DNA of 64,000 nucleotides from Paraphysomonas bandaiensis (Eukaryota > Protista > Chrysophyceae). The DNA is taken from positions 124,001-188,000 of the forward strand of contig CBFFRP010000335.1 of NCBI GenBank assembly GCA_965644295.1, in the 5' to 3' direction. Below are positions 1-64,000 of the stretch, piece after piece; positions within the stretch are counted from its first letter, which is position 1, and each line of letters opens with the position of its first letter. The notes beneath the pieces were generated by a model. The model saw nothing but the letters and a program-made list of their open reading frames with translations. It was not told the DNA's origin and did not search any database. The position numbers and the translations under genes were made by a program.

Positions 1-3000
1 TCCCACGAAACTAATTCAGCGTCCGGATCGTGAGCGCCAGTTGTGCGGAATATGTACTCGCCGTCTGCCATGCAAGACTTACATGCGGTAGTGTGGTCAC
101 CCCCTTCATAAAACTCGCTACAATAAGGTTTACCGTATGCAAACAGTACAGATTTGTTTTCAGCATCAGTGATGTACCATCCCGTCCGAAGGAATTCGGA
201 TGAGGTCACATTCAGGCTGCTATCTGCTGAGTCGCCTAGAGAAGTGTTACCAGAGTTGGTAAAATCCATGAAAAACTCATCGGCATAAATATGGGTGTCC
301 ACATTAAAAGAAAAGCAGGTACTACCGCAATTTTCTGGATATATCCACAGATTTTTCCACGAATCGATGGTATAGGACTGACTAATGTAGTCAAAGTTGA
401 ACACCACATGCGTGCCATAACCACCATAGTATTTATTTCTCCATACACCGTTTTCAACAATTTGAACAGTCCAGTGAACCTCCCAAAACAACGCAGGATG
501 GGACACCACACCATCATCCAGCTCAAAATAATACGACTGGTCATAAGGTACATTTAGGGGAACGAGCATCCCCCCACGAATGGATTCATTAAATTTCAAG
601 CCAGTCTTAATCAGATTCGATTGATACACTTGTGCTGAGGGCTGAATAGAATCAGCAGATGTAGTATGTTGGTGTTGATTGGCTGACAACTTAGTGCTAG
701 AACTGGGACCATTTCGCATTGTAGCATAGTATGTGAAGTTAATACTGTGAGGCCACCCGTCACCAAACTGATCATAGAGAGTAATATACAACCCAGTCGG
801 CTTAGACACAGCGGGAGGATACTCCAATATGTCATGCAATATAAAGGGAGGAAAAGGTGTGGGTACAAATGATGGAGCATAACTCGGTATAGGCGTTGGA
901 CCCACTGATGGCCTACAAGAAGGCGCAGCGCTGGGGGTCTCAGAAGGTTCAAATGACGGTAAAAGTGTAGGGGATGCGGAGAGGGAGTCCGAACAGACTT
1001 GATCCACACCGCCCTGCGCTCCTGGAGTACACTTGCCATCTACAATAGTAAACCGAAGCTGAAACTGCGACGTACCGGAAATTCCACAGAACTCCCACAA
1101 CTCCCAATCACTATCACTATCACAAGCACCGGTTGTTTTATACAAATATTCACCATCAGGAAGGCAGCATGAGCATCGACTTTCATTTCCCTCGGCATTA
1201 CATGATGGTGAGCCGTATGCAGTTATCGTAGATGTCTCATTCGCATCTACAATATACCAACCAAGAGTCATGTACTCGCCAGTAGAAATATTTGGTCCAT
1301 AGCCATATGTAATAGGAGTAGACGAATGTAGTACATTACCCCAAAACACATCCAATGAATTATCACCCGTAGTCAAACAATCATGACATACAGATGGATA
1401 CTTCCATACATTTTGAGAGTTCAACAAACTATATGACCCATCCATACGATTAAATGCAAATGTCAAGGTAGTGTTATACCCTCCATAATACTTCTCCTTC
1501 CAAACACCACCCTCTACAATCTGAACTGTCCAGTGTATCTCCCAATAGTACTCGGGAACGATAGATTTCCCATCACTGTCTGTGGAAAATAAGTTGAAAT
1601 GGTACAGTTGATCAACATTTAAATCAGATGGCGGTAAACATCCTGACAGCTTCGGACATTGACAATTCAAGGAATTGGAAACTATATTAGACTCATCATC
1701 ACGAACTTGGGCCCAATAATAGAGTTTAGTTTCATTTCCCCAGCCATCACCAAACTGGTCAAAAGCACTGATATAGAGACAGGTTTCATTATACGCACCA
1801 TCGGAATCAGAACAGTCACTGCATTCAAGAACATTAACCAATGAAAGAGTGCCCAGAATAGTAGGGTTGGACGAAGGAATTGCAGAGGGGATCCACGAAG
1901 GAGATCCACTCGGTAGGCTTGACGGAATAGATGTGGGTTCACCTGAAGGCTCTCCAGTAGGCAAACTACTGGGGACAGATGATGGCTCACCAGTAGGATC
2001 ACCACTAGGTAATGAAGTCGGTACATTGCTTGGTACTGAACTTGGCTGCCCTGTTGGTTCACCACTCGGTAGGCTTGACGGAATAGATGTGGGTTCAAAA
2101 GTTGGTATAGACGTTGGACCCACTGATGGCCTACAAGAAGGCGCAGCGCTGGGGGTCTCAGAAGGTTCAAATGACGGTAAAAGTGTAGGGGATGCGGAGA
2201 GGGAGTCCGAACAGACTTGATCCACACCGCCCTGCGCTCCTGGAGTACACTTGCCATCTACAATAGTAAACCGAAGTTGAAACTGCGACGTACCGGAAAT
2301 TCCACAGAACTCCCACAACTCCCAATCACTATCACTATCACAAGCACCGGTTGTTTTATACAAATATTCACCATCAGGAAGGCAGCATGAGCATCGACTT
2401 TCATTTCCCTCGGCATTACATGATGGTGAGCCGTATGCAGTTATCGTAGATGTCTCATTCGCATCTACAATATACCAACCAAGAGTCATGTACTCGCCAG
2501 TAGAAATATTTGGTCCATAGCCATATGTAATAGGAGTAGACGAATGTAGTACATTACCCCAAAACACATCCAATGAATTATCACCCGTAGTCAAACAATC
2601 ATGACATACAGATGGATACTTCCATACATTTTGAGAGTTCAACAAACTATATGACCCATCCATACGATTAAATGCAAATGTCAAGGTAGTGTTATACCCT
2701 CCATAATACTTCTCCTTCCAAACACCACCCTCTACAATCTGAACTGTCCAGTGTATCTCCCAATAGTACTCGGGAACGATAGATTTCCCATCACTGTCTG
2801 TGGAAAATAAGTTGAAATGGTACAGTTGATCAACATTTAAATCAGATGGCGGTAAACATCCTGACAGCTTCGGACATTGACAATTCAAGGAATTGGAAAC
2901 TATATTAGACTCATCATCACGAACTTGGGCCCAATAATAGAGTTTAGTTTCATTTCCCCAGCCATCACCAAACTGGTCAAAAGCACTGATATAGAGACAG

Positions 3001-6000
3001 GTTTCATTATACGCACCATCGGAATCAGAACAGTCACTGCATTCAAGAACATTAACCAATGAAAGAGTGCCCAGAATAGTAGGGTTGGACGAAGGAATTG
3101 CAGAGGGGATCCACGAAGGAGATCCACTCGGTAGGCTTGACGGAATAGATGTGGGTTCACCTGAAGGCTCTCCAGTAGGCAAACTACTGGGGACAGATGA
3201 TGGCTCACCAGTAGGATCACCACTAGGTAATGAAGTCGGTACATTGCTTGGTACTGAACTTGGCTGCCCTGTTGGTTCACCACTCGGTAGGCTTGACGGA
3301 ATAGATGTGGGTTCAATAGTTGGTATAGACGTTGGACCTACTGATGGCCTACAAGAAGGCGCAGCGCTGGGGGTCTCAGAAGGTTCAAATGACGGTAAAA
3401 GTGTAGGGGATGCGGAGAGGGAGTCCGAACAGACTTGATCCACACCGCCCTGCGCTCCTGGAGTACACTTGCCATCTACAATAGTAAACCGAAGCTGAAA
3501 CTGCGACGTACCGGAAATTCCACAGAACTCCCACAACTCCCAATCACTATCACTATCACAAGCACCGGTTGTTTTATACAAATATTCACCATCAGGAAGG
3601 CAGCATGAGCATCGACTTTCATTTCCCTCGGCATTACATGATGGTGAGCCGTATGCAGTTATCGTAGATGTCTCATTCGCATCTACAATATACCAACCAA
3701 GAGTCATGTACTCGCCAGTAGAAATATTTGGTCCATAGCCATATGTAATAGGAGTAGACGAATGTAGTACATTACCCCAAAACATATCCAATGAATTATC
3801 ACCCGTAGTCAAACAATCATGACATACAGATGGATACTTCCATACATTTTGAGAGTTCAACAAACTATATGACCCATCCATACGATTAAATGCAAATGTC
3901 AAGGTAGTGTTATACCCTCCATAATACTTCTCCTTCCAAACACCACCCTCTACAATCTGAACTGTCCAGTGTATCTCCCAATAGTACTCGGGAACGATAG
4001 ATTTCCCATCACTGTCTGTGGAAAATAAGTTGAAATGGTACAGTTGATCAACATTTAAATCAGATGGCGGTAAACATCCTGACAGCTTCGGACATTGACA
4101 ATTCAAGGAATTGGAAACTATATTAGACTCATCATCACGAACTTGGGCCCAATAATAGAGTTTAGTTTCATTTCCCCAGCCATCACCAAACTGGTCAAAA
4201 GCACTGATATAGAGACAGGTTTCATTATACGCACCATCGGAATCAGAACAGTCACTGCACTCAAGAACATTAACCAATGAAAGAGTGCCCAGAATAGTAG
4301 GGTTGGACGAAGGAATTGCAGAGGGGATCCACGAAGGAGATCCACTCGGTAGGCTTGACGGAATAGATGTGGGTTCACCTGAAGGCTCTCCAGTAGGCAA
4401 ACTACTGGGGACAGATGATGGCTCACCAGTAGGATCACCACTAGGTAATGAAGTCGGTACATTGCTTGGTACTGAACTTGGCTGCCCTGTTGGTTCACCA
4501 CTCGGTAGGCTTGACGGAATAGATGTGGGTTCACCTGAAGGCTCTCCAGTAGGCAAACTACTGGGGACAGATGATGGCTCACCAGTAGGATCACCACTAG
4601 GTAATGAAGTCGGTACATTGCTTGGTACTGAACTTGGCTGCCCTGTTGGTTCACCACTCGGTAGGCTTGACGGAATAGATGTGGGTTCACCTGAAGGCTC
4701 TCCAGTAGGCAAACTACTGGGGACAGATGATGGCTCACCAGTAGGATCACCACTAGGTAATGAAGTCGGTACATTGCTTGGTACTGAACTTGGCTGCCCT
4801 GTTGGTTCACCACTCGGTAGGCTTGACGGAATAGATGTGGGTTCACCTGAAGGCTCTCCAGTAGGCAAACTACTGGGGACAGATGATGGCTCACCAGTAG
4901 GATCACCACTAGGTAATGAAGTCGGTACATTGCTTGGTACTGAACTTGGCTGCCCTGTTGGTTCACCACTCGGTAGGCTTGACGGAATAGATGTGGGTTC
5001 ACCTGAAGGCTCTCCAGTAGGCAAACTACTGGGGACAGATGATGGCTCACCAGTAGGATCACCACTAGGTAATGAAGTCGGTACATTGCTTGGTACTGAA
5101 CTTGGCTGCCCTGTTGGTTCACCACTCGGTAGGCTTGACGGAATAGATGTGGGTTCACCTGAAGGCTCTCCAGTAGGCAAACTACTGGGGACAGATGATG
5201 GCTCACCAGTAGGATCACCACTAGGTAATGAAGTCGGTACATTGCTTGGTACTGAACTTGGCTGCCCTGTTGGTTCACCACTCGGTAGGCTTGACGGAAT
5301 AGATGTGGGTTCACCTGAAGGCTCTCCAGTAGGCAAACTACTGGGGACAGATGATGGCTCACCAGTAGGATCACCACTAGGTAATGAAGTCGGTACATTG
5401 CTTGGTACTGAACTTGGCTGCCCTGTTGGTTCACCACTCGGTAGGCTTGACGGAATAGATGTGGGTTCACCTGAAGGCTCTCCAGTAGGCAAACTACTGG
5501 GGACAGATGATGGCTCACCAGTAGGATCACCACTAGGTAATGAAGTCGGTACATTGCTTGGTACTGAACTTGGCTGCCCTGTTGGTTCACCACTCGGTAG
5601 GCTTGACGGAATAGATGTGGGTTCACCTGAAGGCTCTCCAGTAGGCAAACTACTGGGGACAGATGATGGCTCACCAGTAGGATCACCACTAGGTAATGAA
5701 GTCGGTACATTGCTTGGTACTGAACTTGGCTGCCCTGTTGGTTCACCACTCGGTAGGCTTGACGGAATAGATGTGGGTTCACCTGAAGGCTCTCCAGTAG
5801 GCAAACTACTGGGGACAGATGATGGCTCACCAGTAGGATCACCACTAGGTAATGAAGTCGGTACATTGCTTGGTACTGAACTTGGCTGCCCTGTTGGTTC
5901 ACCACTCGGTAGGCTTGACGGAATAGATGTGGGTTCACCTGAAGGCTCTCCAGTAGGCAAACTACTGGGGACAGATGATGGCTCACCAGTAGGATCACCA

Positions 6001-15000: not shown

Positions 15001-18000
15001 TCACCCAAACAAGCCAAACAATCAACCTCACTGCCATTACTATGTAACACATCTGATTCATCACAAAATGGCTGCTCATGCAAATATATAACAGTTTTAA
15101 ACAGGTCGGTTATATACCACGATATACCATTGAAACCTTCAGGACCACCAGAATAACCGTACGTATGATATATACCATTCCCATTTCCATAGTGCAGTAC
15201 TTCTGCAGCATATTGGTCAAAGGACACCGACATATTCCAAAAATAAGAACAATCTTTACAAACACCAGGAACAGACCATAAATTTTCCGACATAACCAAA
15301 TCATATGACTCATCAGCACGATTGTACTCAAATACCATACTTGTGTTATAACCTCCGTAATACTTCTCCTTTCGCGTGCCATTTTCAATCACTTGGATTG
15401 TCCAGTGCATCTCCCAAGGATATTCAGCCACGACACTCACGCTTCCATTGGCATCAATACCAAGTAAAGTGAAATAATACAACTGATCGATATTCAATTC
15501 CGAAGGATACACACAACCCGACATCTGAGAACAACTACAATCCAGAGAATTACGAATTATGTTCGAGTCATCATCGTGTATCTGAACCCAATAGTAGAAA
15601 TCTACTGCATCGGACCAACCATCACCAAATTGATCCAATAATGTCACATACAAACATGTATCATTGCTACCAATATTAACTGTATCGCAGTCAGATATAC
15701 ACTCCAACTCATTGTTCAATACAACTGTGCCCAAAGTGGTAGGAGCGGTGATATAAAACAGTGATGGAAGAGATGTGGGTGATGAAGAGGGGCATTTAGA
15801 GGGCACAGATGTTGGTAAATATGATGGCTGTCCCGATGGAACACCAGAAGGTGAATTAGACGGTTCAGCTGTTGGACTTGACGATGGGTCCCCAGTAGGA
15901 TCACCACTAGGTAATGAAGTCGGTACATTGCTTGGTACTGAACTTGGCTGCCCTGTTGGTTCACCACTCGGTAGGCTTGACGGAATAGATGTGGGTTCAC
16001 CTGAAGGCTCTCCAGTAGGCAAACTACTGGGGACAGATGATGGCTCACCAGTAGGATCACCACTAGGTAATGAAGTCGGTACATTGCTTGGTACTGAACT
16101 TGGCTGCCCTGTTGGTTCACCACTCGGTAGGCTTGACGGAATAGATGTGGGTTCACCTGAAGGCTCTCCAGTAGGATGATTGGTTGGAAGCAATGATGGA
16201 ACCGACGATGGTACACCGGTAGGATTAGAACTCAATGTGTCACTACACACACCAGTAACATCACCATAAGCGCCAGGGTGACATACACCATCAGTTATCA
16301 CAAATGTCAACTCATTCTGACCTGTACCAGACACACCACAGAATTCCCACTCAAACCTTGAGCTTCTATCATCACAAGCCCCAGTGGATCTAAAGATATA
16401 GCTACCATCACCCAAACAAGCCAAACAATCAACCTCACTACCATTAGGGTATAACATATTATCGCAGAATACTGTCTCGTGCGCGTACAATAATTCTTTG
16501 TTTATATCAGTCACATACCATGAACTTGTGTACAACTGCGTTGACGTACTACCGTGAGTTGACATGCTACCATCCCCTTTATAGGAAACAGACTCCACAT
16601 AATCTTGATACTTCACTGGCCACTTCAGGGAGCTATTGCATGTAGTGCACAGTCTAGAGGGCATCCGCAAGTTATCAGATAAAACAAAATCATATGACTC
16701 ATCAGCACGATTGTACTCAAATACCATACTTGTGTTATATCCTCCGTAATACTTCTCCTTTCGCGTGCCATTTTCTATAATCTGAACAGTCCAATGCATC
16801 TCCCAAACATACTCCGGAACAGTTTCATTCATACTTGCCAGGGTAAAATAGTAAAGCTGATCGATATTCAATTCCGAAGGATACACACAACCCGACATCT
16901 GAGAACAACTACAATCCAGAGAATTACGAATTATGTTCGATTCATCATCGCGTATCTGAACCCAATAGTAGAAATCTACTGCATCAGACCAACCATCACC
17001 AAATTGATCCAATAATGTCACAAACAAACAGGTTACGGCTTTGTGTTCATCAGGAATACTGCAGTTTGAAGCACATTCAAGGGTATTATTTAGAGTTATA
17101 GTTGACAATGCAGTCGGCATAATAGATGGTGAAGTGGAAGGAAACGCCGTCGGAAACTTACTAGGAACCAATGATGGTACAGAACTCGGAGTGCTAGTGG
17201 GTGCTGTGGACGGCAACGTGGATGGAGAGTTAGAAGGTTTCATGGATGGCCTTCCGGAGGGTCGCATTGACGGCAATGCAGATGGACCACTAGTCGGTTC
17301 AACTGAAGGATTTACAGACGGAAGAGCCGATGGATTAGAACTTGGTATAGCAGATGGGAGTACAGACGGGCAAGTAGAGGGACACGAAGAAGGAGTAACA
17401 GAAGGCCGACTCGAAGGTAACACAGACGGAGAGTGCGTAGGCATACCAGAAGGGTTGTCAGTTGGTTCGTGTGTAGGCTTTTCCGTAGGCAGCTGTGAGG
17501 GATTATGAGAAGGTGATGCACTGGGTGTGTATGTTGGTCCTCCACTGGGGTCCCCCGATGGACAGCACGTCGGCATTAAAGATGGATTGCTAGTAGGGCC
17601 CCTCGATGGACAGCACGAGGGGATACTAGATGGATCGCTGGTAGGTTTCTCAGTTGGTATACAACTTGGCTTAAACGTAGGGATGCTGGAAGGGATACAA
17701 GAAGGTTGAAGTGTAGGTTCGCCAGATGGACCTTGTGTCGGGTATCCACTAGGTTGCACAGTGGGAAATGATGAAGGGCATTGACTAGGAGACGAAGTAG
17801 GGTCCACACTAGGGATAAATGTTGGCCACCAGGAAGGATAATTTGAAGGCATGCCTGATGGTATTCCAGTCGGTACAAAAGTTGGAAGATATGTGGGCAC
17901 TCTCGACGGTTTTGCAGAGGGAAGTGCTGAAGGAGAAGAGGTGGGAAGTACGGTTGGTATACTCGTTGGCTCATCAGAAGGTAAAAACGTGGGTTGCTCA

Positions 18001-21000
18001 GACGGAACAAGGGTAGGGTAAACAGAAGGAAACAATGTTGGAGATCCACTGGGAAGTTCCGTTGGGTTTCCAGTTGGTAAGCCACTTGGACATGTTGACG
18101 GATGCTTAGAAGGTAAGCTCGAAGGAAATGTAGAAGGTGAAAAGGATGGTACTGCACTAGGAACACAGGAAGGAATAGATGATGGGGATTCAGACGGCAA
18201 AACACTGGGATGAAACGTTGGCAAAGATGATGGAGACACACTAGGAAAAACACTAGGTATACGACTAGGACATCCACTTGGACAAAACGTAGGCTCACCG
18301 GTTGGAAGCAATGATGGAACCGACGATGGTACACTGGTAGGATTAGAACTCAATGTGTCACTACACACGCCAGTAACATCACCATAAGCGCCAGGGTGAC
18401 ATACACCATCAGTTATCACAAATGACAACTCATTCTGACCGGTACCAGACACACCACAGAATTCCCACTCAAACCTTGAACTTCTATCATCACAAGCCCC
18501 AGTGGATCTAAAGATATAGCTACCATCACCCAAACAAGCCAAACAATCAACCTCACTGCCATTACTATGTAACACATCTGATTCATCACAAAATGGCTGC
18601 TCATGCAAATATATAACAGTTTTAAACAGGTCGGTTATATACCACGATATACCATTGAAACCTTCAGGACCACCAGAATAACCGTACGTATGATATATAC
18701 CATTCCCATTTCCATAGTGCAGTACTTCTGCAGCATATTGGTCAAAGGACACCGACATATTCCAAAAATAAGAACAATCTTTACAAACACCAGGAACAGA
18801 CCATAAATTTTCCGACATAACCAAATCATATGACTCATCAGCACGATTGTACTCAAATACCATACTTGTGTTATAACCTCCGTAATACTTCTCCTTTCGC
18901 GTGCCATTTTCTATAATCTGAACAGTCCAATGCATCTCCCAAACATACTCCGGAACAGTTTCATTCATACTTGCCAGGGTAAAATAGTAAAGCTGATCGA
19001 TATTCAATTCCGAAGGATACACACAACCCGACATCTGAGAACAACTACAATCCAGAGAATTACGAATTATGTTCGAGTCATCATCGCGTATCTGAACCCA
19101 ATAGTAGAAATCTACTGCATCAGACCAACCATCACCAAATTGATCCAATAATGTCACATACAAACATGTATCATTGCTACCAATATTAACTGTATCGCAG
19201 TCAGATATACATTCTAACTCATTGTTCAATACAACTGTGCCCAAAGTCGTAGGGGCGGATGATGGTTGTCCGGATGGAAGAGATGTGGGTGATGAAGAGG
19301 GGCATTCAGAGGGCACAGATGTTGGTAAATATGATGGCTGTCCTGATGGACTCAATGATGGTCGATTCGTAGGGGTACAGGATGGTATTACAGAAGGATA
19401 TCCGCTTGGTACATGTGAAGGAATTCCACTTGGAGATCCACTTGGACAAAACGTAGGCTCACCGGTTGGAAGCAATGATGGAACCGACGATGGTACACTG
19501 GTAGGATTAGAACTCAATGTGTCACTACACACGCCAGTAACATCACCATAAGCGCCAGGGTGACATACACCATCAGTTATCACAAATGACAACTCATTCT
19601 GACCGGTACCAGACACACCACAGAATTCCCACTCAAACCTTGAACTTCTATCATCACAAGCCCCAGTGGATCTAAAGATATAGCTACCATCACCCAAACA
19701 AGCCAAACAATCAACCTCACTGCCATTACTATGTAACACATCTGATTCATCACAAAATGGCTGCTCATGCAAATATATAACAGTTTTAAACAGGTCGGTT
19801 ATATACCACGATATACCATTGAAACCTTCAGGACCACCAGAATAACCGTACGTATGATATATACCATTCCCATTTCCATAGTGCAGTACTTCTGCAGCAT
19901 ATTGGTCAAAGGACACCGACATATTCCAAAAATAAGAACAATCTTTACAAACACCAGGAACAGACCATAAATTTTCCGACATAACCAAATCATATGACTC
20001 ATCAGCACGATTGTACTCAAATACCATACTTGTGTTATATCCTCCGTAATACTTCTCCTTTCGCGTGCCATTTTCTATAATCTGAACAGTCCAATGCATC
20101 TCCCAAACATACTCCGGAACAGTTTCATTCATACTTGCCAGGGTAAAATAGTAAAGCTGATCGATATTCAATTCCGAAGGATACACACAACCCGACATCT
20201 GAGAACAACTACAATCCAGAGAATTACGAATTATGTTCGAGTCATCATCGCGTATCTGAACCCAATAGTAGAAATCTACTGCATCAGACCAACCATCACC
20301 AAATTGATCCAATAATGTCACATACAAACATGTATCATTGCTACCAATATTAACTGTATCGCAGTCAGATATACATTCTAACTCATTGTTCAATACAACT
20401 GTGCCCAAAGTCGTAGGGGCGGATGATGGTTGTCCGGATGGAAGAGATGTGGGTGATGAAGAGGGGCATTCAGAGGGCACAGATGTTGGTAAATATGATG
20501 GCTGTCCTGATGGACTCAATGATGGTCGATTCGTAGGGGTACAGGATGGTATTACAGAAGGATATCCGCTTGGTACATGTGAAGGAATTCCACTTGGAGA
20601 TCCACTAGGACAAAACGTAGGCTCACCGGTTGGAAGCAATGATGGAACCGACGATGGTACACTGGTAGGATTAGAACTCAATGTGTCACTACACACGCCA
20701 GTAACATCACCATAAGCGCCAGGGTGACATACACCATCAGTTATCACAAATGACAACTCATTCTGACCGGTACCAGACACACCACAGAATTCCCACTCAA
20801 ACCTTGAACTTCTATCATCACAAGCCCCAGTGGATCTAAAGATATAGCTACCATCACCCAAACAAGCCAAACAATCAACCTCACTGCCATTACTATGTAA
20901 CACATCTGATTCATCACAAAATGGCTGCTCATGCAAATATATAACAGTTTTAAACAGGTCGGTTATATACCACGATATACCATTGAAACCTTCAGGACCA

Positions 21001-21986
21001 CCAGAATAACCGTACGTATGATATATACCATTCCCATTTCCATAGTGCAGTACTTCTGCAGCATATTGGTCAAAGGACACCGACATATTCCAAAAATAAG
21101 AACAATCTTTACAAACACCAGGAACAGACCATAAATTTTCCGACATAACCAAATCATATGACTCATCAGCACGATTGTACTCAAATACCATACTTGTGTT
21201 ATAACCTCCGTAATACTTCTCCTTTCGAGTGCCATTTTCTATAATCTGAACAGTCCAATGCATCTCCCAAACATACTCCGGAACAGTTTCATTCATACTT
21301 GCCAGGGTAAAATAGTAAAGCTGATCGATATTCAATTCCGAATGATACACACAACCCGACATCTGAGAACAACTACAATCCAGAGAATTACGAATTATGT
21401 TCGAGTCATCATCGCGTATCTGAACCCAATAGTAGAAATCTACTGCATCAGACCAACCATCACCAAATTGATCCAATAATGTCACATACAAACATGTATC
21501 ATTGCTACCAATATTAACTGTATCGCAGTCAGATATACATTCTAACTCATTGTTCAATACAACTGTGCCCAAAGTCGTAGGGGCGGATGATGGTTGTCCG
21601 GATGGAAGAGATGTGGGTGATGAAGAGGGGCATTCAGAGGGCACAGATGTTGGTAAATATGATGGCTGTCCCGATGGAACACCAGAAGGTGAATTAGACG
21701 GTTGTGATGAAGGAGTATATGAGGGTATGCCTGAAGGATATCCACATGGTACATGTGAAGGAGTTCTACTTGGAGACGTGAGTTCACCCGTTGTAAAGTG
21801 AGACGGTGTGATTCTCTCTGATTCATTTTCAGAGTATCTTTCTGCCGTGTTTCCAACCCTTCCCTTCGACGACAACAAAGCATGTTTATGATTGTCATTT
21901 AGCTCTGATGACTGCACATAGTTGTGATATAATATTCCAGTTGGAATCAAAATAATGAATAATAACACACACTTCCACTGTACCAT
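1..21986 (-). CDS. Giant (>7,300 aa, runs off the window) intron-less secreted/surface protein: signal peptide, >=15 Cys-rich DQFGDGW-motif domains and Pro/Ser/Thr mucin-like stalks
   Basis: Manual translation from ATG 21986 gives MVQWKCVLLFIILIPTGILYHNYVQS..., then PSxx repeats, then ELECISDCDTVNIGSNDTCLYVTLLDQFGDGWSDAVDFYYWVQIRDDDSNI...WEMHWTVQ...EKYYGGYNT...CLACLGDGSYIFRSTGACDD...WEFCG. The same frame at positions 3-90 reads ACKSCMADGEYIFRTTGAHDPDAELVSW. The ORF track lists no minus-strand ORF in this frame across 1-22 kb, as expected if there is no stop. All repeat periods (156, 1164, 1191, 1218 bp) are multiples of 3. Confidence 0.92.
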   Translation of the reverse strand, partial: MVQWKCVLLFIILIPTGILYHNYVQSSELNDNHKHALLSSKGRVGNTAERYSENESERITPSHFTTGELTSPSRTPSHVPCGYPSGIPSYTPSSQPSNSPSGVPSGQPSYLPTSVPSECPSSSPTSLPSGQPSSAPTTLGTVVLNNELECISDCDTVNIGSNDTCLYVTLLDQFGDGWSDAVDFYYWVQIRDDDSNIIRNSLDCSCSQMSGCVYHSELNIDQLYYFTLASMNETVPEYVWEMHWTVQIIENGTRKEKYYGGYNTSMVFEYNRADESYDLVMSENLWSVPGVCKDCSYFWNMSVSFDQYAAEVLHYGNGNGIYHTYGYSGGPEGFNGISWYITDLFKTVIYLHEQPFCDESDVLHSNGSEVDCLACLGDGSYIFRSTGACDDRSSRFEWEFCGVSGTGQNELSFVITDGVCHPGAYGDVTGVCSDTLSSNPTSVPSSVPSLLPTGEPTFCPSGSPSGIPSHVPSGYPSVIPSCTPTNRPSLSPSGQPSYLPTSVPSECPSSSPTSLPSGQPSSAPTTLGTVVLNNELECISDCDTVNIGSNDTCLYVTLLDQFGDGWSDAVDFYYWVQIRDDDSNIIRNSLDCSCSQMSGCVYPSELNIDQLYYFTLASMNETVPEYVWEMHWTVQIIENGTRKEKYYGGYNTSMVFEYNRADESYDLVMSENLWSVPGVCKDCSYFWNMSVSFDQYAAEVLHYGNGNGIYHTYGYSGGPEGFNGISWYITDLFKTVIYLHEQPFCDESDVLHSNGSEVDCLACLGDGSYIFRSTGACDDRSSRFEWEFCGVSGTGQNELSFVITDGVCHPGAYGDVTGVCSDTLSSNPTSVPSSVPSLLPTGEPTFCPSGSPSGIPSHVPSGYPSVIPSCTPTNRPSLSPSGQPSYLPTSVPSECPSSSPTSLPSGQPSSAPTTLGTVVLNNELECISDCDTVNIGSNDTCLYVTLLDQFGDGWSDAVDFYYWVQIRDDDSNIIRNSLDCSCSQMSGCVYPSELNIDQLYYFTLASMNETVPEYVWEMHWTVQIIENGTRKEKYYGGYNTSMVFEYNRADESYDLVMSENLWSVPGVCKDCSYFWNMSVSFDQYAAEVLHYGNGNGIYHTYGYSGGPEGFNGISWYITDLFKTVIYLHEQPFCDESDVLHSNGSEVDCLACLGDGSYIFRSTGACDDRSSRFEWEFCGVSGTGQNELSFVITDGVCHPGAYGDVTGVCSDTLSSNPTSVPSSVPSLLPTGEPTFCPSGCPSRIPSVFPSVSPSSLPTFHPSVLPSESPSSIPSCVPSAVPSFSPSTFPSSLPSKHPSTCPSGLPTGNPTELPSGSPTLFPSVYPTLVPSEQPTFLPSDEPTSIPTVLPTSSPSALPSAKPSRVPTYLPTFVPTGIPSGMPSNYPSWWPTFIPSVDPTSSPSQCPSSFPTVQPSGYPTQGPSGEPTLQPSCIPSSIPTFKPSCIPTEKPTSDPSSIPSCCPSRGPTSNPSLMPTCCPSGDPSGGPTYTPSASPSHNPSQLPTEKPTHEPTDNPSGMPTHSPSVLPSSRPSVTPSSCPSTCPSVLPSAIPSSNPSALPSVNPSVEPTSGPSALPSMRPSGRPSMKPSNSPSTLPSTAPTSTPSSVPSLVPSKFPTAFPSTSPSIMPTALSTITLNNTLECASNCSIPDEHKAVTCLFVTLLDQFGDGWSDAVDFYYWVQIRDDESNIIRNSLDCSCSQMSGCVYPSELNIDQLYYFTLASMNETVPEYVWEMHWTVQIIENGTRKEKYYGGYNTSMVFEYNRADESYDFVLSDNLRMPSRLCTTCNSSLKWPVKYQDYVESVSYKGDGSMSTHGSTSTQLYTSSWYVTDINKELLYAHETVFCDNMLYPNGSEVDCLACLGDGSYIFRSTGACDDRSSRFEWEFCGVSGTGQNELTFVITDGVCHPGAYGDVTGVCSDTLSSNPTGVPSSVPSLLPTNHPTGEPSGEPTSIPSSLPSGEPTGQPSSVPSNVPTSLPSGDPTGEPSSVPSSLPTGEPSGEPTSIPSSLPSGEPTGQPSSVPSNVPTSLPSGDPTGDPSSSPTAEPSNSPSGVPSGQPSYLPTSVPSKCPSSSPTSLPSLFYITAPTTLGTVVLNNELECISDCDTVNIGSNDTCLYVTLLDQFGDGWSDAVDFYYWVQIHDDDSNIIRNSLDCSCSQMSGCVYPSELNIDQLYYFTLLGIDANGSVSVVAEYPWEMHWTIQVIENGTRKEKYYGGYNTSMVFEYNRADESYDLVMSENLWSVPGVCKDCSYFWNMSVSFDQYAAEVLHYGNGNGIYHTYGYSGGPEGFNGISWYITDLFKTVIYLHEQPFCDESDVLHSNGSEVDCLACLGDGSYIFRSTGACDDRSSRFEWEFCGVSGTGQNELSFVITDGVCHPGAYGDVTGVCSDTLSSNPTSVPSSVPSLLPTGEPTFCPSGSPSGIPSHVPSGYPSGIPSYTPSSQPSNSPSGVPSGQPSYLPTSVPSECPSSSPTSLPSGQPSSAPTTLGTVVLNNELECISDCDTVNIGSNDTCLYVTLLDQFGDGWSDAVDFYYWVQIRDDDSNIIRNSLDCSCSQMSGCVYPSELNIDQLYYFTLLGIDANGSVSVVAEYPWEMHWTIQVIENGTRKEKYYGGYNTSMVFEYNRADESYDLVMSENLWSVPGVCKDCSYFWNMSVSFDQYAAEVLHYGNGNGIYHTYGYSGGPEGFNGISWYITDLFKTVIYLHEQPFCDESDVLHSNGSEVDCLACLGDGSYIFRSTGACDDRSSRFEWEFCGVSGTGQNELSFVITDGVCHPGAYGDVTGVCSDTLSSNPTSVPSSVPSLLPTGEPTFCPSGSPSGIPSHVPSGYPSGIPSYTPSSQPSNSPSGVPSGQPSYLPTSVPSECPSSSPTSLPSGQPSSAPTTLGTVVLNNELECISDCDTVNIGSNDTCLYVTLLDQFGDGWSDAVDFYYWVQIRDDDSNIIRNSLDCSCSQMSGCVYPSELNIDQLYYFTLLGIDANGSVSVVAEYPWEMHWTIQVIENGTRKEKYYGGYNTSMVFEYNRADESYDLVMSENLWSVPGVCKDCSYFWNMSVSFDQYAAEVLHYGNGNGIYHTYGYSGGPEGFNGISWYITDLFKTVIYLHEQPFCDESDVLHSNGSEVDCLACLGDGSYIFRSTGACDDRSSRFEWEFCGVSGTGQNELSFVITDGVCHPGAYGDVTGVCSDTLSSNPTSVPSSVPSLLPTGEPTFCPSGSPSGIPSHVPSGYPSGIPSYTPSSQPSNSPSGVPSGQPSYLPTSVPSECPSSSPTSLPSGQPSSAPTTLGTVVLNNELECISDCDTVNIGSNDTCLYVTLLDQFGDGWSDAVDFYYWVQIRDDDSNIIRNSLDCSCSQMSGCVYPSELNIDQLYYFTLLGIDANGSVSVVAEYPWEMHWTIQVIENGTRKEKYYGGYNTSMVFEYNRADESYDLVMSENLWSVPGVCKDCSYFWNMSVSFDQYAAEVLHYGNGNGIYHTYGYSGGPEGFNGISWYITDLFKTVIYLHEQPFCDESDVLHSNGSEVDCLACLGDGSYIFRSTGACDDRSSRFEWEFCGVSGTGQNELSFVITDGVCHPGAYGDVTGVCSDTLSSNPTGVPSSVPSLLPTGEPTFCPSGSPSGIPSHVPSGYPTVLGSVVLDDVLDCASNISLYTSYENSTCLLLSVMDQFGDGWSNETQFHYWVQIRDDDSNIVSNTLDCSCLLMSGCLYPSDLNIDQLYHFTLVASNFYDELVVPDHFWEMQWTVELVVNGTRTEKYYGGFNTSMVFLYDRTMESYDLIWSQNLWSYHDDCSGVSSLSESFPNNTLGEFTNLVNESDGYWNIALSVFDQADPTVLYLYSHSWCTTNISSILSDLDGLADGFYTLRTAGAFDANSESVTWDFCGVIGTSQFEFQFSVLNGMCYPGAYGNVDQICNGNISPAPTIIPSGQPSAHPSNCPSSTPTAIPTMLPSGSPSWQPSSFPSSTPTSIPSALPTAVPTALGTVVLNNELECSGADISSIYVTTNDTCLYVTLLDQFGDGWSDAVDFYYWVQIRDDDSNIIRNSLDCSCSQMSGCVYPSELNIDQLYYFTLASMNETVPEYVWEMHWTVQIIENGTRKEKYYGGYNTSIAFQYSGQDRSFDMVWSENTYATPMPCEYCVNLITSLESFLAIPLNEDGIRCTPQWYIANATTTEIHAYGIISSMGISDCVYGNLLDGIYTLRITHTTTSLQKQEWEFCGVSGTGQNELTFVITDGVCHPGAYGDVTGVCSDTLSSNPTSVPSSVPSLLPTGKPTSIPSGEPTWLPTTSPSYLPTSVPSECPSSSPTSLPSGQPSSAPTTLGTVVLNNELECISDCDTVNIGSNDTCLYVTLLDQFGDGWSDAVDFYYWVQIRDDDSNIIRNSLDCSCSQMSGCVYPSELNIDQLYFFTLASMNETVPEYVWEMHWTVQIIENGTRKEKYYGGYNTSMVFEYNRADESYDFVLSDNLRMPSRLCTTCNSSLKWPVKYQDYLESVSYKGDGSMSTHGSTSTQLYTSSWYVTDINKELLYAHETVFCDNMLYPNGSEVDCLACLGDGSYIFRSTGACDDRSSRFEWEFCGVSGTGQNELTFVITDGVCHPGAYGDVTGVCSDTLSSNPTGVPSSVPSLLPTNHPTGEPSGEPTSIPSSLPSGEPTGQPSSVPSNVPTSLPSGDPTGEPSSVPSSLPTGEPSGEPTSIPSSLPSGEPTGQPSSVPSNVPTSLPSGDPTGEPSSVPSSLPTGEPSGEPTSIPSSLPSGEPTGQPSSVPSNVPTSLPSGDPTGEPSSVPSSLPTGEPSGEPTSIPSSLPSGEPTGQPSSVPSNVPTSLPSGDPTGEPSSVPSSLPTGEPSGEPTSIPSSLPSGEPTGQPSSVPSNVPTSLPSGDPTGEPSSVPSSLPTGEPSGEPTSIPSSLPSGEPTGQPSSVPSNVPTSLPSGDPTGEPSSVPSSLPTGEPSGEPTSIPSSLPSGEPTGQPSSVPSNVPTSLPSGDPTGEPSSVPSSLPTGEPSGEPTSIPSSLPSGEPTGQPSSVPSNVPTSLPSGDPTGEPSSVPSSLPTGEPSGEPTSIPSSLPSGEPTGQPSSVPSNVPTSLPSGDPTGEPSSVPSSLPTGEPSGEPTSIPSSLPSGEPTGQPSSVPSNVPTSLPSGDPTGEPSSVPSSLPTGEPSGEPTSIPSSLPSGEPTGQPSSVPSNVPTSLPSGDPTGEPSSVPSSLPTGEPSGEPTSIPSSLPSGEPTGQPSSVPSNVPTSLPSGDPTGEPSSVPSSLPTGEPSGEPTSIPSSLPSGEPTGQPSSVPSNVPTSLPSGDPTGEPSSVPSSLPTGEPSGEPTSIPSSLPSGEPTGQPSSVPSNVPTSLPSGDPTGEPSSVPSSLPTGEPSGEPTSIPSSLPSGEPTGQPSSVPSNVPTSLPSGDPTGEPSSVPSSLPTGEPSGEPTSIPSSLPSGEPTGQPSSVPSNVPTSLPSGDPTGEPSSVPSSLPTGEPSGEPTSIPSSLPSGEPTGQPSSVPSNVPTSLPSGDPTGEPSSVPSSLPTGEPSGEPTSIPSSLPSGEPTGQPSSVPSNVPTSLPSGDPTGEPSSVPSSLPTGEPSGEPTSIPSSLPSGEPTGQPSSVPSNVPTSLPSGDPTGEPSSVPSSLPTGEPSGEPTSIPSSLPSGEPTGQPSSVPSNVPTSLPSGDPTGEPSSVPSSLPTGEPSGEPTSIPSSLPSGEPTGQPSSVPSNVPTSLPSGDPTGEPSSVPSSLPTGEPSGEPTSIPSSLPSGEPTGQPSSVPSNVPTSLPSGDPTGEPSSVPSSLPTGEPSGEPTSIPSSLPSGEPTGQPSSVPSNVPTSLPSGDPTGEPSSVPSSLPTGEPSGEPTSIPSSLPSGEPTGQPSSVPSNVPTSLPSGDPTGEPSSVPSSLPTGEPSGEPTSIPSSLPSGSPSWIPSAIPSSNPTILGTLSLVNVLECSDCSDSDGAYNETCLYISAFDQFGDGWGNETKLYYWAQVRDDESNIVSNSLNCQCPKLSGCLPPSDLNVDQLYHFNLFSTDSDGKSIVPEYYWEIHWTVQIVEGGVWKEKYYGGYNTTLTFAFNRMDGSYSLLNSQNVWKYPSVCHDCLTTGDNSLDMFWGNVLHSSTPITYGYGPNISTGEYMTLGWYIVDANETSTITAYGSPSCNAEGNESRCSCCLPDGEYLYKTTGACDSDSDWELWEFCGISGTSQFQLRFTIVDGKCTPGAQGGVDQVCSDSLSASPTLLPSFEPSETPSAAPSCRPSVGPTSIPTIEPTSIPSSLPSGEPTGQPSSVPSNVPTSLPSGDPTGEPSSVPSSLPTGEPSGEPTSIPSSLPSGSPSWIPSAIPSSNPTILGTLSLVNVLECSDCSDSDGAYNETCLYISAFDQFGDGWGNETKLYYWAQVRDDESNIVSNSLNCQCPKLSGCLPPSDLNVDQLYHFNLFSTDSDGKSIVPEYYWEIHWTVQIVEGGVWKEKYYGGYNTTLTFAFNRMDGSYSLLNSQNVWKYPSVCHDCLTTGDNSLDVFWGNVLHSSTPITYGYGPNISTGEYMTLGWYIVDANETSTITAYGSPSCNAEGNESRCSCCLPDGEYLYKTTGACDSDSDWELWEFCGISGTSQFQLRFTIVDGKCTPGAQGGVDQVCSDSLSASPTLLPSFEPSETPSAAPSCRPSVGPTSIPTFEPTSIPSSLPSGEPTGQPSSVPSNVPTSLPSGDPTGEPSSVPSSLPTGEPSGEPTSIPSSLPSGSPSWIPSAIPSSNPTILGTLSLVNVLECSDCSDSDGAYNETCLYISAFDQFGDGWGNETKLYYWAQVRDDESNIVSNSLNCQCPKLSGCLPPSDLNVDQLYHFNLFSTDSDGKSIVPEYYWEIHWTVQIVEGGVWKEKYYGGYNTTLTFAFNRMDGSYSLLNSQNVWKYPSVCHDCLTTGDNSLDVFWGNVLHSSTPITYGYGPNISTGEYMTLGWYIVDANETSTITAYGSPSCNAEGNESRCSCCLPDGEYLYKTTGACDSDSDWELWEFCGISGTSQFQLRFTIVDGKCTPGAQGGVDQVCSDSLSASPTLLPSFEPSETPSAAPSCRPSVGPTPIPSYAPSFVPTPFPPFILHDILEYPPAVSKPTGLYITLYDQFGDGWPHSINFTYYATMRNGPSSSTKLSANQHQHTTSADSIQPSAQVYQSNLIKTGLKFNESIRGGMLVPLNVPYDQSYYFELDDGVVSHPALFWEVHWTVQIVENGVWRNKYYGGYGTHVVFNFDYISQSYTIDSWKNLWIYPENCGSTCFSFNVDTHIYADEFFMDFTNSGNTSLGDSADSSLNVTSSEFLRTGWYITDAENKSVLFAYGKPYCSEFYEGGDHTTACKSCMADGEYIFRTTGAHDPDAELVSW
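900..4340 (-). repeat. Three near-identical 1218-bp domain+linker units (domain copies 12-14 of the giant protein)
   Basis: Near-identical shadow ORFs at 1659, 2877 and 4095 (period 1218). Confidence 0.92.
4342..8141 (-). repeat. 156-bp coding tandem array, ~24 copies, encoding PTSIPSSLPSGEPTGQPSSVPSNVPTSLPSGDPTGEPSSVPSSLPTGEPSGE (13 P-[ST]-x-x tetrapeptides)
   Basis: Exact 156-bp periodicity. The only variant I noticed is ccctgtT/Cggt (copies near 6051, 6987, 7143, 7455, 7611), which is synonymous (Pro CCA/CCG) in the giant ORF frame. Confidence 0.95.
11130..15740 (-). repeat. Four near-identical 1191-bp domain+linker units (domain copies 5-8)
   Basis: Shadow ORFs repeat at 11505, 12696, 13887 and 15078 (period 1191). 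Confidence 0.92.
18270..21680 (-). repeat. Three near-identical 1164-bp domain+linker units (domain copies 1-3)
   Basis: Shadow ORFs repeat at 19174, 20338 and 21502 (period 1164). Confidence 0.92.
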
Positions 21987-43390: not shown

Positions 43391-43837
43391 GGTGGTTGGT
43401 AGATAAGGGTGATAGATCATGCCTTTAGTTAACTGTCCTCTATGCATACATAGCTACAGAGCATCCCACCTCCAGTGCATGTATCTGCTGTGCGTATACC
43501 ATATACCGGTACTGTACTGTGCGATATACAGTCATATCACATAATTTAGGCACAGACATCCCATATATGGGACACTGTTCACTGCTACGTAGCGAGACTA
43601 CAGCTGTATACTGTACTGTATGAATCTTTCCAATTAGCACGTACTAAAAAATGCTCTATGTACTCTGTATGTATATATATACCAGTATATACCAGTATAG
43701 ACTATAGGTATACTGTACGTCTATGTGTACTTCTACACTCACTGCCGCTGGACGTGTATATCTGGTCTGGCGGATATGGACGACACACACACGCATATCA
43801 CTCCATTGAGAGATCCTCATACACCACTAGACGCCCC

Positions 43838-63900: not shown

Positions 63901-64000
63901 GCCAAATACCCAGACACAGTTTATGGGTGTGGCAAATTTGGTAAGAGATTGCGTACGCGTATATGTGCTGATTGCGAAACCATTGCATGCAATGTTGGGG

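What the first reader, a model, noticed from the sequence alone, without database searches (positions are those of the whole stretch)
1..21986. Hidden >7,300-aa intron-less 'beads-on-a-string' surface protein that the ORF track misses
Seen: one minus-strand frame runs from ATG 21986 past position 1 with a hydrophobic N-terminus. It holds 15 copies of a ~280-aa domain; the DQFGDGW motif falls near 21460, 20295, 19130, 16995, 15620, 14430, 13240, 12048, 11012, 9972, 8960, 4182, 2964, 1746 and 760. Copy 1 has ~15 Cys and many N-x-S/T sequons. The domains alternate with P-[ST]-x-x stalks. The track shows only shadow ORFs, because this frame has no stop in the window. Most neighbouring genes have introns, yet this one has none over 22 kb. 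Inference: a giant glycosylated adhesin, coat or scale-type protein. I cannot assign the domain to a named family.
Basis: partly seen in the sequence, partly recalled or inferred. Interest (0 to 1): 0.88.

Follow-up and report, generated by a model that had tools for sequence, protein, structure and literature searches.

The report
Giant mucin-like surface protein, unnamed domain
A single uninterrupted 22.3-kb gene in a silica-scaled chrysophyte flagellate (Paraphysomonas) encodes a 7,435-residue membrane-anchored "beads-on-a-string" surface protein; its 15 beads are a ~300-residue cysteine-rich domain that matches no named family or solved structure, and whether the gene is expressed is still unproven.

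Summary
The minus-strand frame from ATG 21986 has no stop in 7,328 codons, while the other five frames have 202-808. It ends 321 nt left of the window, giving a 7,435-aa, 790-kDa, pI 4.05 protein. The layout is a signal-peptide-like N-terminus, 15 copies of a ~300-aa Cys-rich DQFGDGW domain, P[ST]xx stalks (38% of residues, including a 1,299-aa stalk made of 24 copies of a 52-aa unit), one C-terminal TM helix and a 35-aa tail.

The domain has no Pfam, NCBIfam or PDB-sequence match and no convincing fold match, although the AlphaFold model is confident (pLDDT 85, pTM 0.87). It has about 495 unnamed relatives. The few with an organism name are from silica-scaled chrysophytes (Paraphysomonas, Mallomonas). 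Partner domains are REJ, FG-GAP, NHL and LRR.

The same genome holds at least 59 full copies in at least 11 giant open frames. Copies are under purifying selection (dN/dS 0.19-0.52).

I first took the organism for a diatom. A 100%-identical MMETSP1103 transcript of the neighbouring gene places it in Paraphysomonas.

Transcription of the giant gene itself is not shown.

Verdict: a real gene and a new variant of the mucin-like giant adhesin kind. Function is inferred. The scan noted other giant surface genes in this genome, not this domain.

The parts
21984..21986 (-). Start codon (first in-frame ATG; an in-frame stop lies 15 codons upstream)
   Evidence: open frame 7,450 = 7,435 + 15 codons
21912..21986 (-). 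Hydrophobic N-terminus (aa 1-25), signal-peptide-like
   Evidence: Kyte-Doolittle 19-aa windows above 1.8 occur only at aa 1-25 and 7372-7403. No signal-peptide predictor was available, so this is an inference.
21582..21911 (-). Unique N-terminal region followed by the first P[ST]xx stalk (aa 26-135)
20682..21581 (-). Domain copy d01 (aa 136-435; 15 Cys, 6 sequons)
   Evidence: (E 1.3e-163)
19518..20417 (-). Domain copy d02
   Evidence: (the 1,164-nt module differs from d01's at 4 positions)
18354..19253 (-). Domain copy d03
17106..18341 (-). 412-aa unique P[ST]xx stalk (aa 1216-1627)
   Evidence: An independent short-read contig of 1,309 nt covers 16993-18301 with 13 differences.
16236..17117 (-). 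Domain copy d04 (variant middle loops; closest to d11)
14829..15743 (-). Domain copy d05 (first of four 1,191-nt modules; carries a different, 5-aa-longer loop at domain positions ~94-118)
13638..14552 (-). Domain copy d06 (its module is 100% identical in DNA to d07's)
12447..13361 (-). Domain copy d07
11256..12170 (-). Domain copy d08
10278..11135 (-). Domain copy d09 (diverged: 10 Cys, ~49% aa identity to d01)
9276..10094 (-). Domain copy d10 (diverged second half; 12 Cys)
8202..9083 (-). Domain copy d11
4290..8189 (-). 1,299-aa stalk (aa 4600-5899): 156-nt / 52-aa unit x 24.4 copies at 99% identity
   Evidence: TRF 4342-8141; Pfam PT repeat E 9.2e-184
3420..4304 (-). Domain copy d12 (second subtype, 16 Cys; first of three 1,218-nt modules)
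2202..3086 (-). Domain copy d13
984..1868 (-). Domain copy d14
1..881 (-). Membrane-proximal domain copy d15 (aa 7036-7355; only 7 Cys; runs 78 nt past the window's left end). Beyond the window, in L001 coordinates: TM helix aa 7379-7400 at 1287-1352, 35-aa tail at 1182-1286, stop codon at 1179-1181 (contig C335:123679-123681).
   Evidence: d15 groups 100/100 with the last, pre-TM domain of paralog C275.

Best explanation
Shown from the sequence: the locus is one intact, intron-less 22,308-nt gene of a Paraphysomonas-type chrysophyte. It encodes a 7,435-aa type I membrane protein. The large N-terminal ectodomain carries 15 Cys-rich ~300-aa 'DxFGDGW' modules separated by proline/serine/threonine tetrapeptide stalks. 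It is followed by one TM helix and a 35-aa cytoplasmic tail.

Inferred: the protein enters the secretory pathway. The globular modules are disulfide-bonded and N-glycosylated. The P[ST]xx stalks are hydroxylated and O-glycosylated into stiff, extended, acidic spacers. With 2,858 linker residues at ~0.3 nm each, the ectodomain could reach about 0.9 um from the plasma membrane.

I think the most likely role is a multivalent tether or adhesin of the cell coat. In this reading the DxFGDGW modules are the ligand-binding, lectin-like units. Their invariant residues form an acidic and aromatic cluster (D-x-F-G-D-G-W, W-E, K-Y-Y-G-G). In relatives the module occupies the N-terminal, ligand-facing position ahead of a REJ domain, or follows an FG-GAP or NHL propeller.

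The 1,299-aa spacer would lift the 11 distal modules away from 4 membrane-proximal ones. They could then engage material outside the cell, such as the silica-scale layer or prey and particle surfaces.

The array grew by recent in-situ tandem amplification of whole domain-plus-stalk modules and by patchwise conversion of surface loops.
For: The gene is real. There are 0 stops in 7,328 codons against 202-808 in the other frames. dN/dS is 0.19-0.52 between diverged copies. Of 31 differences seen in other runs' contigs, 19 are synonymous, 12 non-synonymous and none creates a stop. Independent short-read contigs cover the ATG region and the unique stalk. Topology: there are only two hydrophobic segments, aa 1-25 and aa 7372-7403 (the TM helix itself is aa 7379-7400), followed by C-R-S. 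Extracellular character: 248 Cys, 94 sequons, pI 4.05, 38% P[ST]xx, and a Pfam PT repeat at E 1e-91 to 1e-184. Domain: AF2 on a 45-sequence alignment gives pLDDT 85.4 and pTM 0.87, with an N-lobe beta-sandwich and a small beta-rich C-lobe. Invariant residues are D37, G40, W43 and E106, with near-invariant F39, D41, G42, C77, G125, Y246, R249, W263 and C266. Partner domains in relatives are REJ (P0023, P0016, own-genome C169), FG-GAP_2 in 9/59, NHL in 4/59 and LRR in 2/59. The adjacent gene encodes FG-GAP, one DAFGDGW domain and a TM helix, and it is transcribed: it is 100% identical to a complete MMETSP1103 ORF. Family: 84 matches and at least 59 full copies in at least 11 giant open frames of this genome. 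Paralog C275 also ends in domain, TM helix and short tail, and its last domain is sister to d15 at 100/100 support. Named relatives come only from the silica-scaled chrysophytes Paraphysomonas and Mallomonas. In the sea-urchin REJ receptor, lectin modules sit N-terminal to REJ and bind egg-jelly glycan (PMC4700764). That is an analogy for the domain's position, not a test.
Against: There is no direct evidence of transcription, translation, glycosylation or localisation. Two transcriptome-sized runs with the same species label hold ~0% of the gene's sampled words, and another holds 4%. No fragment of this protein appeared among database hits, although MMETSP peptides of the same organism are in the collection. 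The only hit in an RNA library is a 160-nt stretch in a marine metatranscriptome contig whose flank diverges. Ligand binding by the domain is inferred from residue conservation and domain position only. The best fold match (TerD, Z 6.8) is within the tool's noise. The tail has no recognisable signalling or cytoskeleton-binding domain. Copy number inside the perfect repeats rests on one assembly and is only roughly supported by k-mer depth ratios of about 4-9x the flanks.
Confidence: 0.55

Rival explanations
1. It is a passive mucin-type glycocalyx or lubricant. The protein forms a hydrated, negatively charged barrier, and the Cys-rich modules are only structural knots or disulfide cross-linking points, with no specific ligand.
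For: 38% PTS stalk, pI 4.05 and 94 sequons. The described diatom protein CaFAP1 likewise alternates PTS-rich and Cys-rich parts and is called mucin-like (bioRxiv 10.1101/2023.03.06.531300).
Against: The module is strongly conserved at a specific acidic and aromatic motif across about 495 relatives. It is also reused singly on REJ, FG-GAP, NHL and LRR receptor-like proteins, where a mere spacer would be pointless.
Confidence: 0.2
2. It is a recognition or signalling receptor (mating, self/non-self or prey discrimination), analogous to the REJ-domain paralogs. The variable loops of the copies would supply specificity.
For: The same module heads REJ-domain proteins. Variation among copies is concentrated in a few loops and looks patchwise, for example the 25-aa replacement between the d01 and d05 types. 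REJ receptors of brown algae and sea urchins are gamete-recognition candidates (PMC4700764).
Against: This protein has no REJ, GPS or channel part, and its 35-aa tail has no recognisable signalling domain. dN/dS is below 1 in all measurable pairs. Many copies are identical, which favours avidity over diversity.
Confidence: 0.1
3. It is a silica-biogenesis protein of the silica-deposition-vesicle membrane that templates or organises scale formation.
For: The organism silicifies: at least 7 SIT loci score above the Pfam cut-off. Named relatives are only from silica-scaled chrysophytes. The protein is type I, acidic and Ser-rich, as are some diatom SDV proteins. Chrysophytes lack Sin1 (PMC5525289), so their machinery is unknown.
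Against: The sequence is lysine-poor and shows none of the silaffin-type lysine-rich character. A 0.9-um ectodomain is oversized for a vesicle lumen. The partner domains (FG-GAP, REJ, LRR) point to the cell surface. The motif was not found in the supplements of a three-diatom silica-proteome study, although those are diatoms, not chrysophytes.
Confidence: 0.07
4. It is a silent or decaying repeat array whose size is inflated by assembly, and not a working gene.
For: No transcript evidence. 64% of 31-mers are repeated. Two modules are 100% identical. Several paralogs sit at contig ends, and one is split over two contigs.
Against: A 22.3-kb frame without a stop includes about 2,600 distinct codons. 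dN/dS is below 1. Variants in other runs create no stops and show an excess of synonymous changes. The signal peptide, TM helix and tail are intact. The depth of repeated segments in an independent DNA-like run is 4-9 times that of the unique flanks.
Confidence: 0.06

Closest known systems
Diatom mucin-like and giant PTS-rich surface or adhesive proteins (CaFAP1, CaTrailin4 at 894 kDa, Ca5609 at >1 MDa; Zackova Suchanova et al. 2023, bioRxiv 10.1101/2023.03.06.531300)
   Same: Stramenopile proteins with a signal peptide, very large size, long PTS-rich repeats expected to be O-glycosylated, interspersed with Cys-containing modules of unknown function. They were only resolved by long-read assembly.
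   Different: A different organism group (chrysophyte, not diatom). Those trail proteins are described as lacking a membrane anchor, whereas this one has a TM helix and tail. There is no CAA/pAdhesive_15 domain in the protein or in the genome. The GDGW motif does not occur in that paper's sequence supplement (machine-read PDF).
Membrane-tethered animal mucins (own knowledge)
   Same: Type I topology, a huge PTS-rich O-glycosylation region built from tandem repeats, and a short cytoplasmic tail.
   Different: No SEA, VWD, EGF or CT-knot domains were found. Here 15 large Cys-rich globular modules punctuate the stalk. There is no sequence relationship.
REJ / polycystin-1-type receptors (Pfam PF02010)
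   Same: Relatives P0023 and P0016 and own-genome paralog C169 combine one DxFGDGW module with a REJ domain, as suREJ1 combines lectin modules with REJ (PMC4700764).
   Different: The window's protein itself has no REJ domain.
TerD-type Ca-binding beta-sandwich (PDB 2qz7, 2kxt)
   Same: Best structural alignment of the N-lobe: Z 6.8 and 6.3, 115-118 residues, rmsd 3.6-3.7. Both have acidic G-D-G-type motifs (own knowledge for TerD).
   Different: Z is below the tool's stated noise level of 7-8. Identity is 8-10%. There is no sequence-profile match. The match covers only residues 27-150 of 300.
High-molecular-mass glycoproteins on the scales and bristles of Mallomonas (Ludwig et al. 1996, Planta; recalled from memory, not in the searchable library)
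   Same: Silica-scaled chrysophyte, very large surface glycoproteins proposed to hold scales to each other and to the membrane. Mallomonas annulata proteins carry parts of this domain.
   Different: As far as I know, no sequences exist for those glycoproteins. The link is a lead, not a test.

Membership tests
Pfam PT disordered repeat (PF04886), applied to the stalks | Score above the gathering cut-off of 26.2 bits | tested here: met
   297.6 and 595.1 bits on the two halves of the protein
Any Pfam, NCBIfam or PDB-sequence family, applied to the ~300-aa domain | A significant profile match | tested here: not met
   Pfam on 4 copies and on 45 diverse members; NCBIfam on 45 members; profile against PDB sequences gave 0 hits at E<=1
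Trailin / choice-of-anchor A adhesins | CAA (pAdhesive_15, PF20597) domain | tested here: not met
   Absent from the protein. No match in the genome either, but the search's controls also stayed silent, so absence from the genome is weak.
CaFAP1-type mucin-like frustule protein | Signal peptide plus alternating PTS-rich and Cys-rich regions | tested here: met
   This is an architectural resemblance only.
CaFAP1-type mucin-like frustule protein | Homology of the Cys-rich module | tested here: inconclusive
   No GDGW in the paper's sequence supplement. The text is OCR-read and I ran no alignment.
REJ / polycystin-1 family | REJ domain (PF02010) | tested here: not met
   Not found in this protein. 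It is present in relatives P0023 and P0016 and in paralog C169.
TerD-like fold | Structural match clearly above background | tested here: inconclusive
   Z 6.8, within the tool's typical best-Z for unmatched models. Foldseek against PDB gave no hit at E<=1e-3. Atlas TM-scores were <=0.36.
Type I membrane protein | N-terminal signal sequence, a single C-terminal TM helix and a short tail | tested here: met
   Hydropathy shows only two hydrophobic segments. TM helix aa 7379-7400, tail 35 aa. No dedicated predictor was available.
Glycoprotein (N- and O-linked) | Actual glycan attachment | not testable with these tools
   Only sequons (94) and PTS content (38%) are counted.

The most novel reading that the evidence does not exclude
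The DxFGDGW module is a previously undescribed two-lobed extracellular ligand-binding (lectin-like, possibly Ca-dependent) domain, specific to silica-scaled chrysophytes. These cells deploy it singly on REJ, FG-GAP and NHL receptors. They also deploy it in micron-long, rapidly expanding arrays that tether the silica-scale case and/or capture prey. If so, it would give the first molecular handle on how a naked phagotrophic flagellate holds its mineral armour or recognises food.
Probability: 0.25. Interest if true: 0.75.

Novelty: new variant of a known kind. Interest (0 to 1): 0.55.

Why it matters
As far as I could find, almost nothing is known at the molecular level about the cell surface of chrysophyte flagellates. 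These are major bacterivores in seas and lakes, and many wear silica scales. This gene and its family (at least 11 giant genes here, about 500 unnamed relatives elsewhere) are concrete candidates for the coat, scale-tether or prey-capture molecules. They also define a confidently folding domain with no named family or structural match. In addition, the locus is a clean example of how module-level tandem amplification builds near-megadalton proteins that short-read assemblies and ORF callers miss.

Tried and rejected
1. Diatom origin. I inferred it from at least 7 silicon-transporter loci and a diatom-rich Atlas cluster for a neighbour. I rejected it when the neighbouring gene's product proved 100% identical to an MMETSP1103 (Paraphysomonas) transcript, and other named relatives were Paraphysomonas or Mallomonas.

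2. Named family for the domain. None was found in Pfam, NCBIfam, PDB-sequence profiles, Foldseek against PDB, VIA-align wide, ESM Atlas by shape or ESM Atlas by features.

3. Internal duplication. hhalign of the N-lobe against the C-lobe gave probability 6.6%, so the two are not detectably related.

4. Prokaryotic or viral relatives. Pattern-seeded scans of the GTDB genomes and IMG/VR found none. The seeds were narrow, so this is weak evidence. The 45-sequence alignment was too diverse to seed such a scan at all.

5. Literature. 'FGDGW' and 'GDGW' gave nothing relevant. The motif is absent from the supplements of the diatom trail-protein and silica-proteome papers.

6. Expression. All four runs laid were contigs. 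They could not show strand, transcript ends or splicing, and X1/X2 look like DNA. No conclusion on expression is possible.

7. Giant relatives of 4-12 kaa. The word-indexed search found none.

8. First AF2 run on the 7 in-genome copies. pLDDT was only 56, so I discarded it.

9. Fe2OG / prolyl-hydroxylase reading of the neighbour ORF. There was no Pfam or PDB match and only an Atlas lead at 0.87.

10. No structure-of-complex job was run, because I make no specific binding claim.
Full report
OBSERVATION

Translating the reverse complement from ATG 21984-21986 gives 7,328 codons without a stop down to position 1, and 15 exact DQFGDGW motifs within about 15 nt of the listed positions. The other five frames of the same stretch hold 202-808 stops. 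By base composition the chance of an open frame of this length is about 1e-176. It is still about 1e-63 if only the non-repeated third of the sequence is counted, since only 7,809 of 21,956 31-mers are distinct. The ORF lister returns only shadow ORFs in the stalk repeat, because frames that run off the window are not listed.

EXTENDING THE GENE

The window is G000:C335:124001-188000, in a 62.6-Mb genome of 669 contigs. In the DNA to the left the frame continues for 107 codons to a stop at contig 123679-123681. The protein is 7,435 aa, 790 kDa unmodified and pI 4.05, with 248 Cys and 94 N-x-S/T sequons. Only two hydrophobic segments exist. One is aa 1-25, which looks like a signal peptide. The other lies at aa 7372-7403 (TM helix aa 7379-7400) and is followed by a 35-aa tail. 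The protein is therefore type I and TM-anchored, not GPI-anchored. An in-frame stop lies 15 codons upstream of the ATG.

ANATOMY

There are fifteen domain copies of 273-320 aa, separated by linkers of 34 to 1,299 aa.
- In-register P[ST]xx runs total 2,804 aa, or 37.7% of the protein, and match Pfam's PT repeat.
- The longest linker (window 4290-8189) is a 156-nt unit repeated 24.4 times at 99% identity.
- It separates 11 distal domains from 4 membrane-proximal ones.
- At ~0.3 nm per residue, the 2,858 linker residues could span roughly 0.9 um. This is an inference.

At the DNA level there are three runs of near-identical whole modules: d1-d3 (period 1,164 nt), d5-d8 (1,191 nt, with two modules 100% identical) and d12-d14 (1,218 nt). 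Copies d4/d11, d9, d10 and d15 are diverged. The differences between the d01 and d05 types are confined to one ~25-aa loop with a 5-aa indel. Copies d04/d11 differ in the middle loops, and d10 differs in its second half. This pattern suggests patchwise conversion.

CODING CONSTRAINT

dN/dS between diverged copies is 0.19-0.52, and the oldest pairs are saturated at synonymous sites. Contigs of other public runs of the same species label differ from the window by about 1% in the unique stalk. Of the 31 listed differences inside the ORF, 19 are synonymous, 12 are non-synonymous and none creates a stop. Some differences in repeated segments may come from other copies. In a DNA-like run, contig depth is about 96-112 over unique parts and about 400-900 over repeated domain segments. 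That fits a multi-copy array, but it is not a copy count.

THE DOMAIN

- Sequence families: no match in Pfam, NCBIfam or a PDB-sequence profile search.
- Breadth: a profile of seven in-gene copies found 495 relatives at E<=1e-3 among 1.84 billion representative proteins, 48 of them at E<=1e-30. The N-half (profile positions ~20-165) and the C-half (~195-298) also occur separately.
- Conservation: a 45-sequence alignment (A2) shows invariant D37, G40, W43 and E106, and near-invariant F39, D41, G42, C77, G125, G244, Y246, R249, G252, W263, C266, F278 and C285.
- Structure: AlphaFold2 on A2 gives pLDDT 85.4 and pTM 0.87, with an N-lobe beta-sandwich (about residues 27-150), low-confidence loops at 150-200 and 220-240, and a small beta-rich C-lobe. 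A first run on 7 sequences was poor.
- Fold searches: Foldseek against PDB gives nothing at E<=1e-3. The ESM Atlas gives TM<=0.36 by shape and scores below 0.9 by features. VIA-align against 48,161 chains gives TerD as best at Z 6.8 and 6.3, on the N-lobe only, which the tool itself rates as background level.
- The two lobes are not detectably homologous to each other.
- No paper in the library mentions the motif in a relevant context.

CONTEXT OF THE DOMAIN ELSEWHERE

Relatives P0023 (3,100 aa) and P0016 (6,053 aa) combine the domain with REJ domains. Among 59 full-length relatives, 9 carry FG-GAP_2, 4 NHL, 2 LRR and 4 PT repeats, and none carries a typically bacterial secretion tag.

In the same genome the profile matches 84 places. 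At least 59 full copies lie in at least 11 giant open frames of 1,600 to more than 5,000 aa.
- C275 ends, like our gene, in domain, TM helix and short tail.
- C655 starts with a signal peptide followed by a domain. Its 3' end repeats sequence found on the 11-kb contig C652, so one even longer gene is split across contigs.
- C169 has a signal peptide, one domain and a REJ domain.
- Several paralogs sit at contig ends.

A maximum-likelihood tree of the 59 copies puts d15 with the last copy of C275 at 100/100 support, so there is a distinct, older membrane-proximal subtype. The distal copies cluster within their own gene, which indicates in-situ amplification. C275 and C655 show alternating two-type higher-order repeats.

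ORGANISM: A CORRECTION TO MY OWN READING

Silicon-transporter genes at 7 or more loci first suggested a diatom. The gene 5 kb downstream (L004:1783-4839, minus strand, 1,018 aa) encodes a signal peptide, FG-GAP, a diverged DAFGDGW domain and a TM helix. Its product is 100% identical to a complete ORF of transcriptome MMETSP1103, TAXON_ID 36769, which is the genus Paraphysomonas. Other named relatives are from MMETSP1103, from P. imperforata and from Mallomonas annulata.

The genome is therefore that of a colourless, phagotrophic, silica-scaled chrysophyte. Silicon transporters fit that too. Every organism-named relative so far comes from a scale-bearing chrysophyte, and none from the many diatoms in MMETSP and EukProt. 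Only seven hits carry names, however, so the taxonomic range is not settled.

EXPRESSION

Expression of the giant gene is not shown. All runs I could lay were contigs. X1 and X2 look like DNA. X5 covers the ATG and upstream. A marine metatranscriptome contig matches 160 nt (21544-21703) exactly and then diverges. Two transcriptome-sized runs with the same species label hold ~0% of the sampled words of window 8200-17200, and one run with another label holds 4%. No fragment of this protein surfaced in the protein searches, although the neighbour's MMETSP peptide is in the same collection. This is absence of evidence. The gene could be condition-specific, or poorly assembled because of its repeats.

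INTERPRETATION

Shown: the gene is intact, under constraint and encodes a type I protein with the described modular ectodomain. The domain belongs to a sizeable unnamed family whose partner domains are of the extracellular receptor and adhesion type.

Inferred: secretory routing, disulfides, N- and O-glycosylation, an extended stalk, and ligand binding by the modules. The last rests on the acidic and aromatic invariant cluster and on the domain's N-terminal position ahead of REJ, where sea-urchin REJ1 carries its lectin modules (PMC4700764).

I commit to a multivalent cell-coat tether or adhesin at 0.55. The rivals are a passive mucin barrier (0.2), a recognition receptor (0.1), a silica-biogenesis protein (0.07) and a silent or inflated array (0.06).

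COMPARISON WITH WHAT IS KNOWN

The closest described kind is the set of giant PTS-rich modular surface and adhesive proteins of diatoms (CaFAP1, CaTrailin4, Ca5609). Those lack a membrane anchor, rely on CAA or other modules that are absent here, and do not contain the motif. Animal tethered mucins share the topology but none of the domains. I therefore file this as a new variant of a known kind, built on an undescribed domain.

SCAN NOTES

First-stage notes on other pieces of the same genome list further giant surface genes, including a REJ/lectin-like pair and a 64-kb open frame. They are unverified. None mentions this domain.

Noticed in passing
L004:1783-4839 (-) = contig C335:115783-118839, about 5 kb downstream of the giant gene: 1,018-aa type I protein: signal peptide, FG-GAP_2 repeat region, one diverged DAFGDGW domain, TM helix and tail. 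It is 100% identical to a complete MMETSP1103 (Paraphysomonas) transcript, so it is expressed. It is also what identified the organism.
   Followed up: yes
L004:5452-6663 (+) and on to about 6940 = contig C335:119452-120940: 403-aa ORF with a signal-peptide-like start and an H-x-D motif. The frame appears to resume after a candidate 54-nt GT..AG intron (L004 6581-6634). The nearest ESM-Atlas cluster is 'Fe2OG dioxygenase' (score 0.87, a lead only), and there is no Pfam or PDB match. A secretory 2OG oxygenase or prolyl hydroxylase next to a Pro-rich giant gene would be suggestive, but this is unproven.
   Followed up: partly
window 4118-8182: The 156-nt stalk repeat is stop-free in three frames: the real one, a second minus-strand frame (1,354 aa) and a plus-strand frame (1,286 aa). 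This produces large shadow ORFs.
   Followed up: yes
G000 contigs C655 (71-82.8 kb) and C652 (whole 11.2-kb contig): The last ~110 aa of the C655 open frame repeat a stretch found inside the C652 frame. These are probably two pieces of one paralog of more than 7,000 aa, broken by the assembler. Paralogs C275, C644 and C543 also abut contig ends.
   Followed up: partly
G000:C275:107-116 kb and C655:74-82 kb: These paralogs show higher-order repeats in which two domain subtypes alternate (for example C275 copies 1/3/5 are identical and 2/4/6 are identical). The single-subtype runs in the window's gene are different.
   Followed up: partly
G000: C348, C406, C398, C150, C405, C298, C149: At least 7 loci match the silicon transporter family PF03842 above its cut-off. 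Each ~500-560-aa frame holds two half-repeats.
   Followed up: no
window 21544-21703: A marine metatranscriptome contig (run X4) matches 160 nt at 100% and then diverges into a different stalk sequence. It could come from a related strain or from another copy or paralog.
   Followed up: no
L001:1182-1190 (last three codons of the gene): The cytoplasmic tail ends in T-E-V, which fits the class I PDZ-ligand pattern (S/T-x-hydrophobic at the C-terminus; own knowledge). The tails of paralog C275 and relative P0001 end differently (LPF, LPL).
   Followed up: no
window 62001-64000: GC skew jumps to +0.30 with GC at 48%. This coincides with the LTR-retroelement notes of other first readers.
   Followed up: no
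window 33747-35063 (-), 37064-38260 (-), 42044-43447 (-), 59448-60635 (-): Ordinary neighbouring genes: a cyclin (the match starts mid-profile, so an upstream exon is likely), a CMAS-type methyltransferase, an M28 peptidase and an Rsm22-like methyltransferase.
   Followed up: partly
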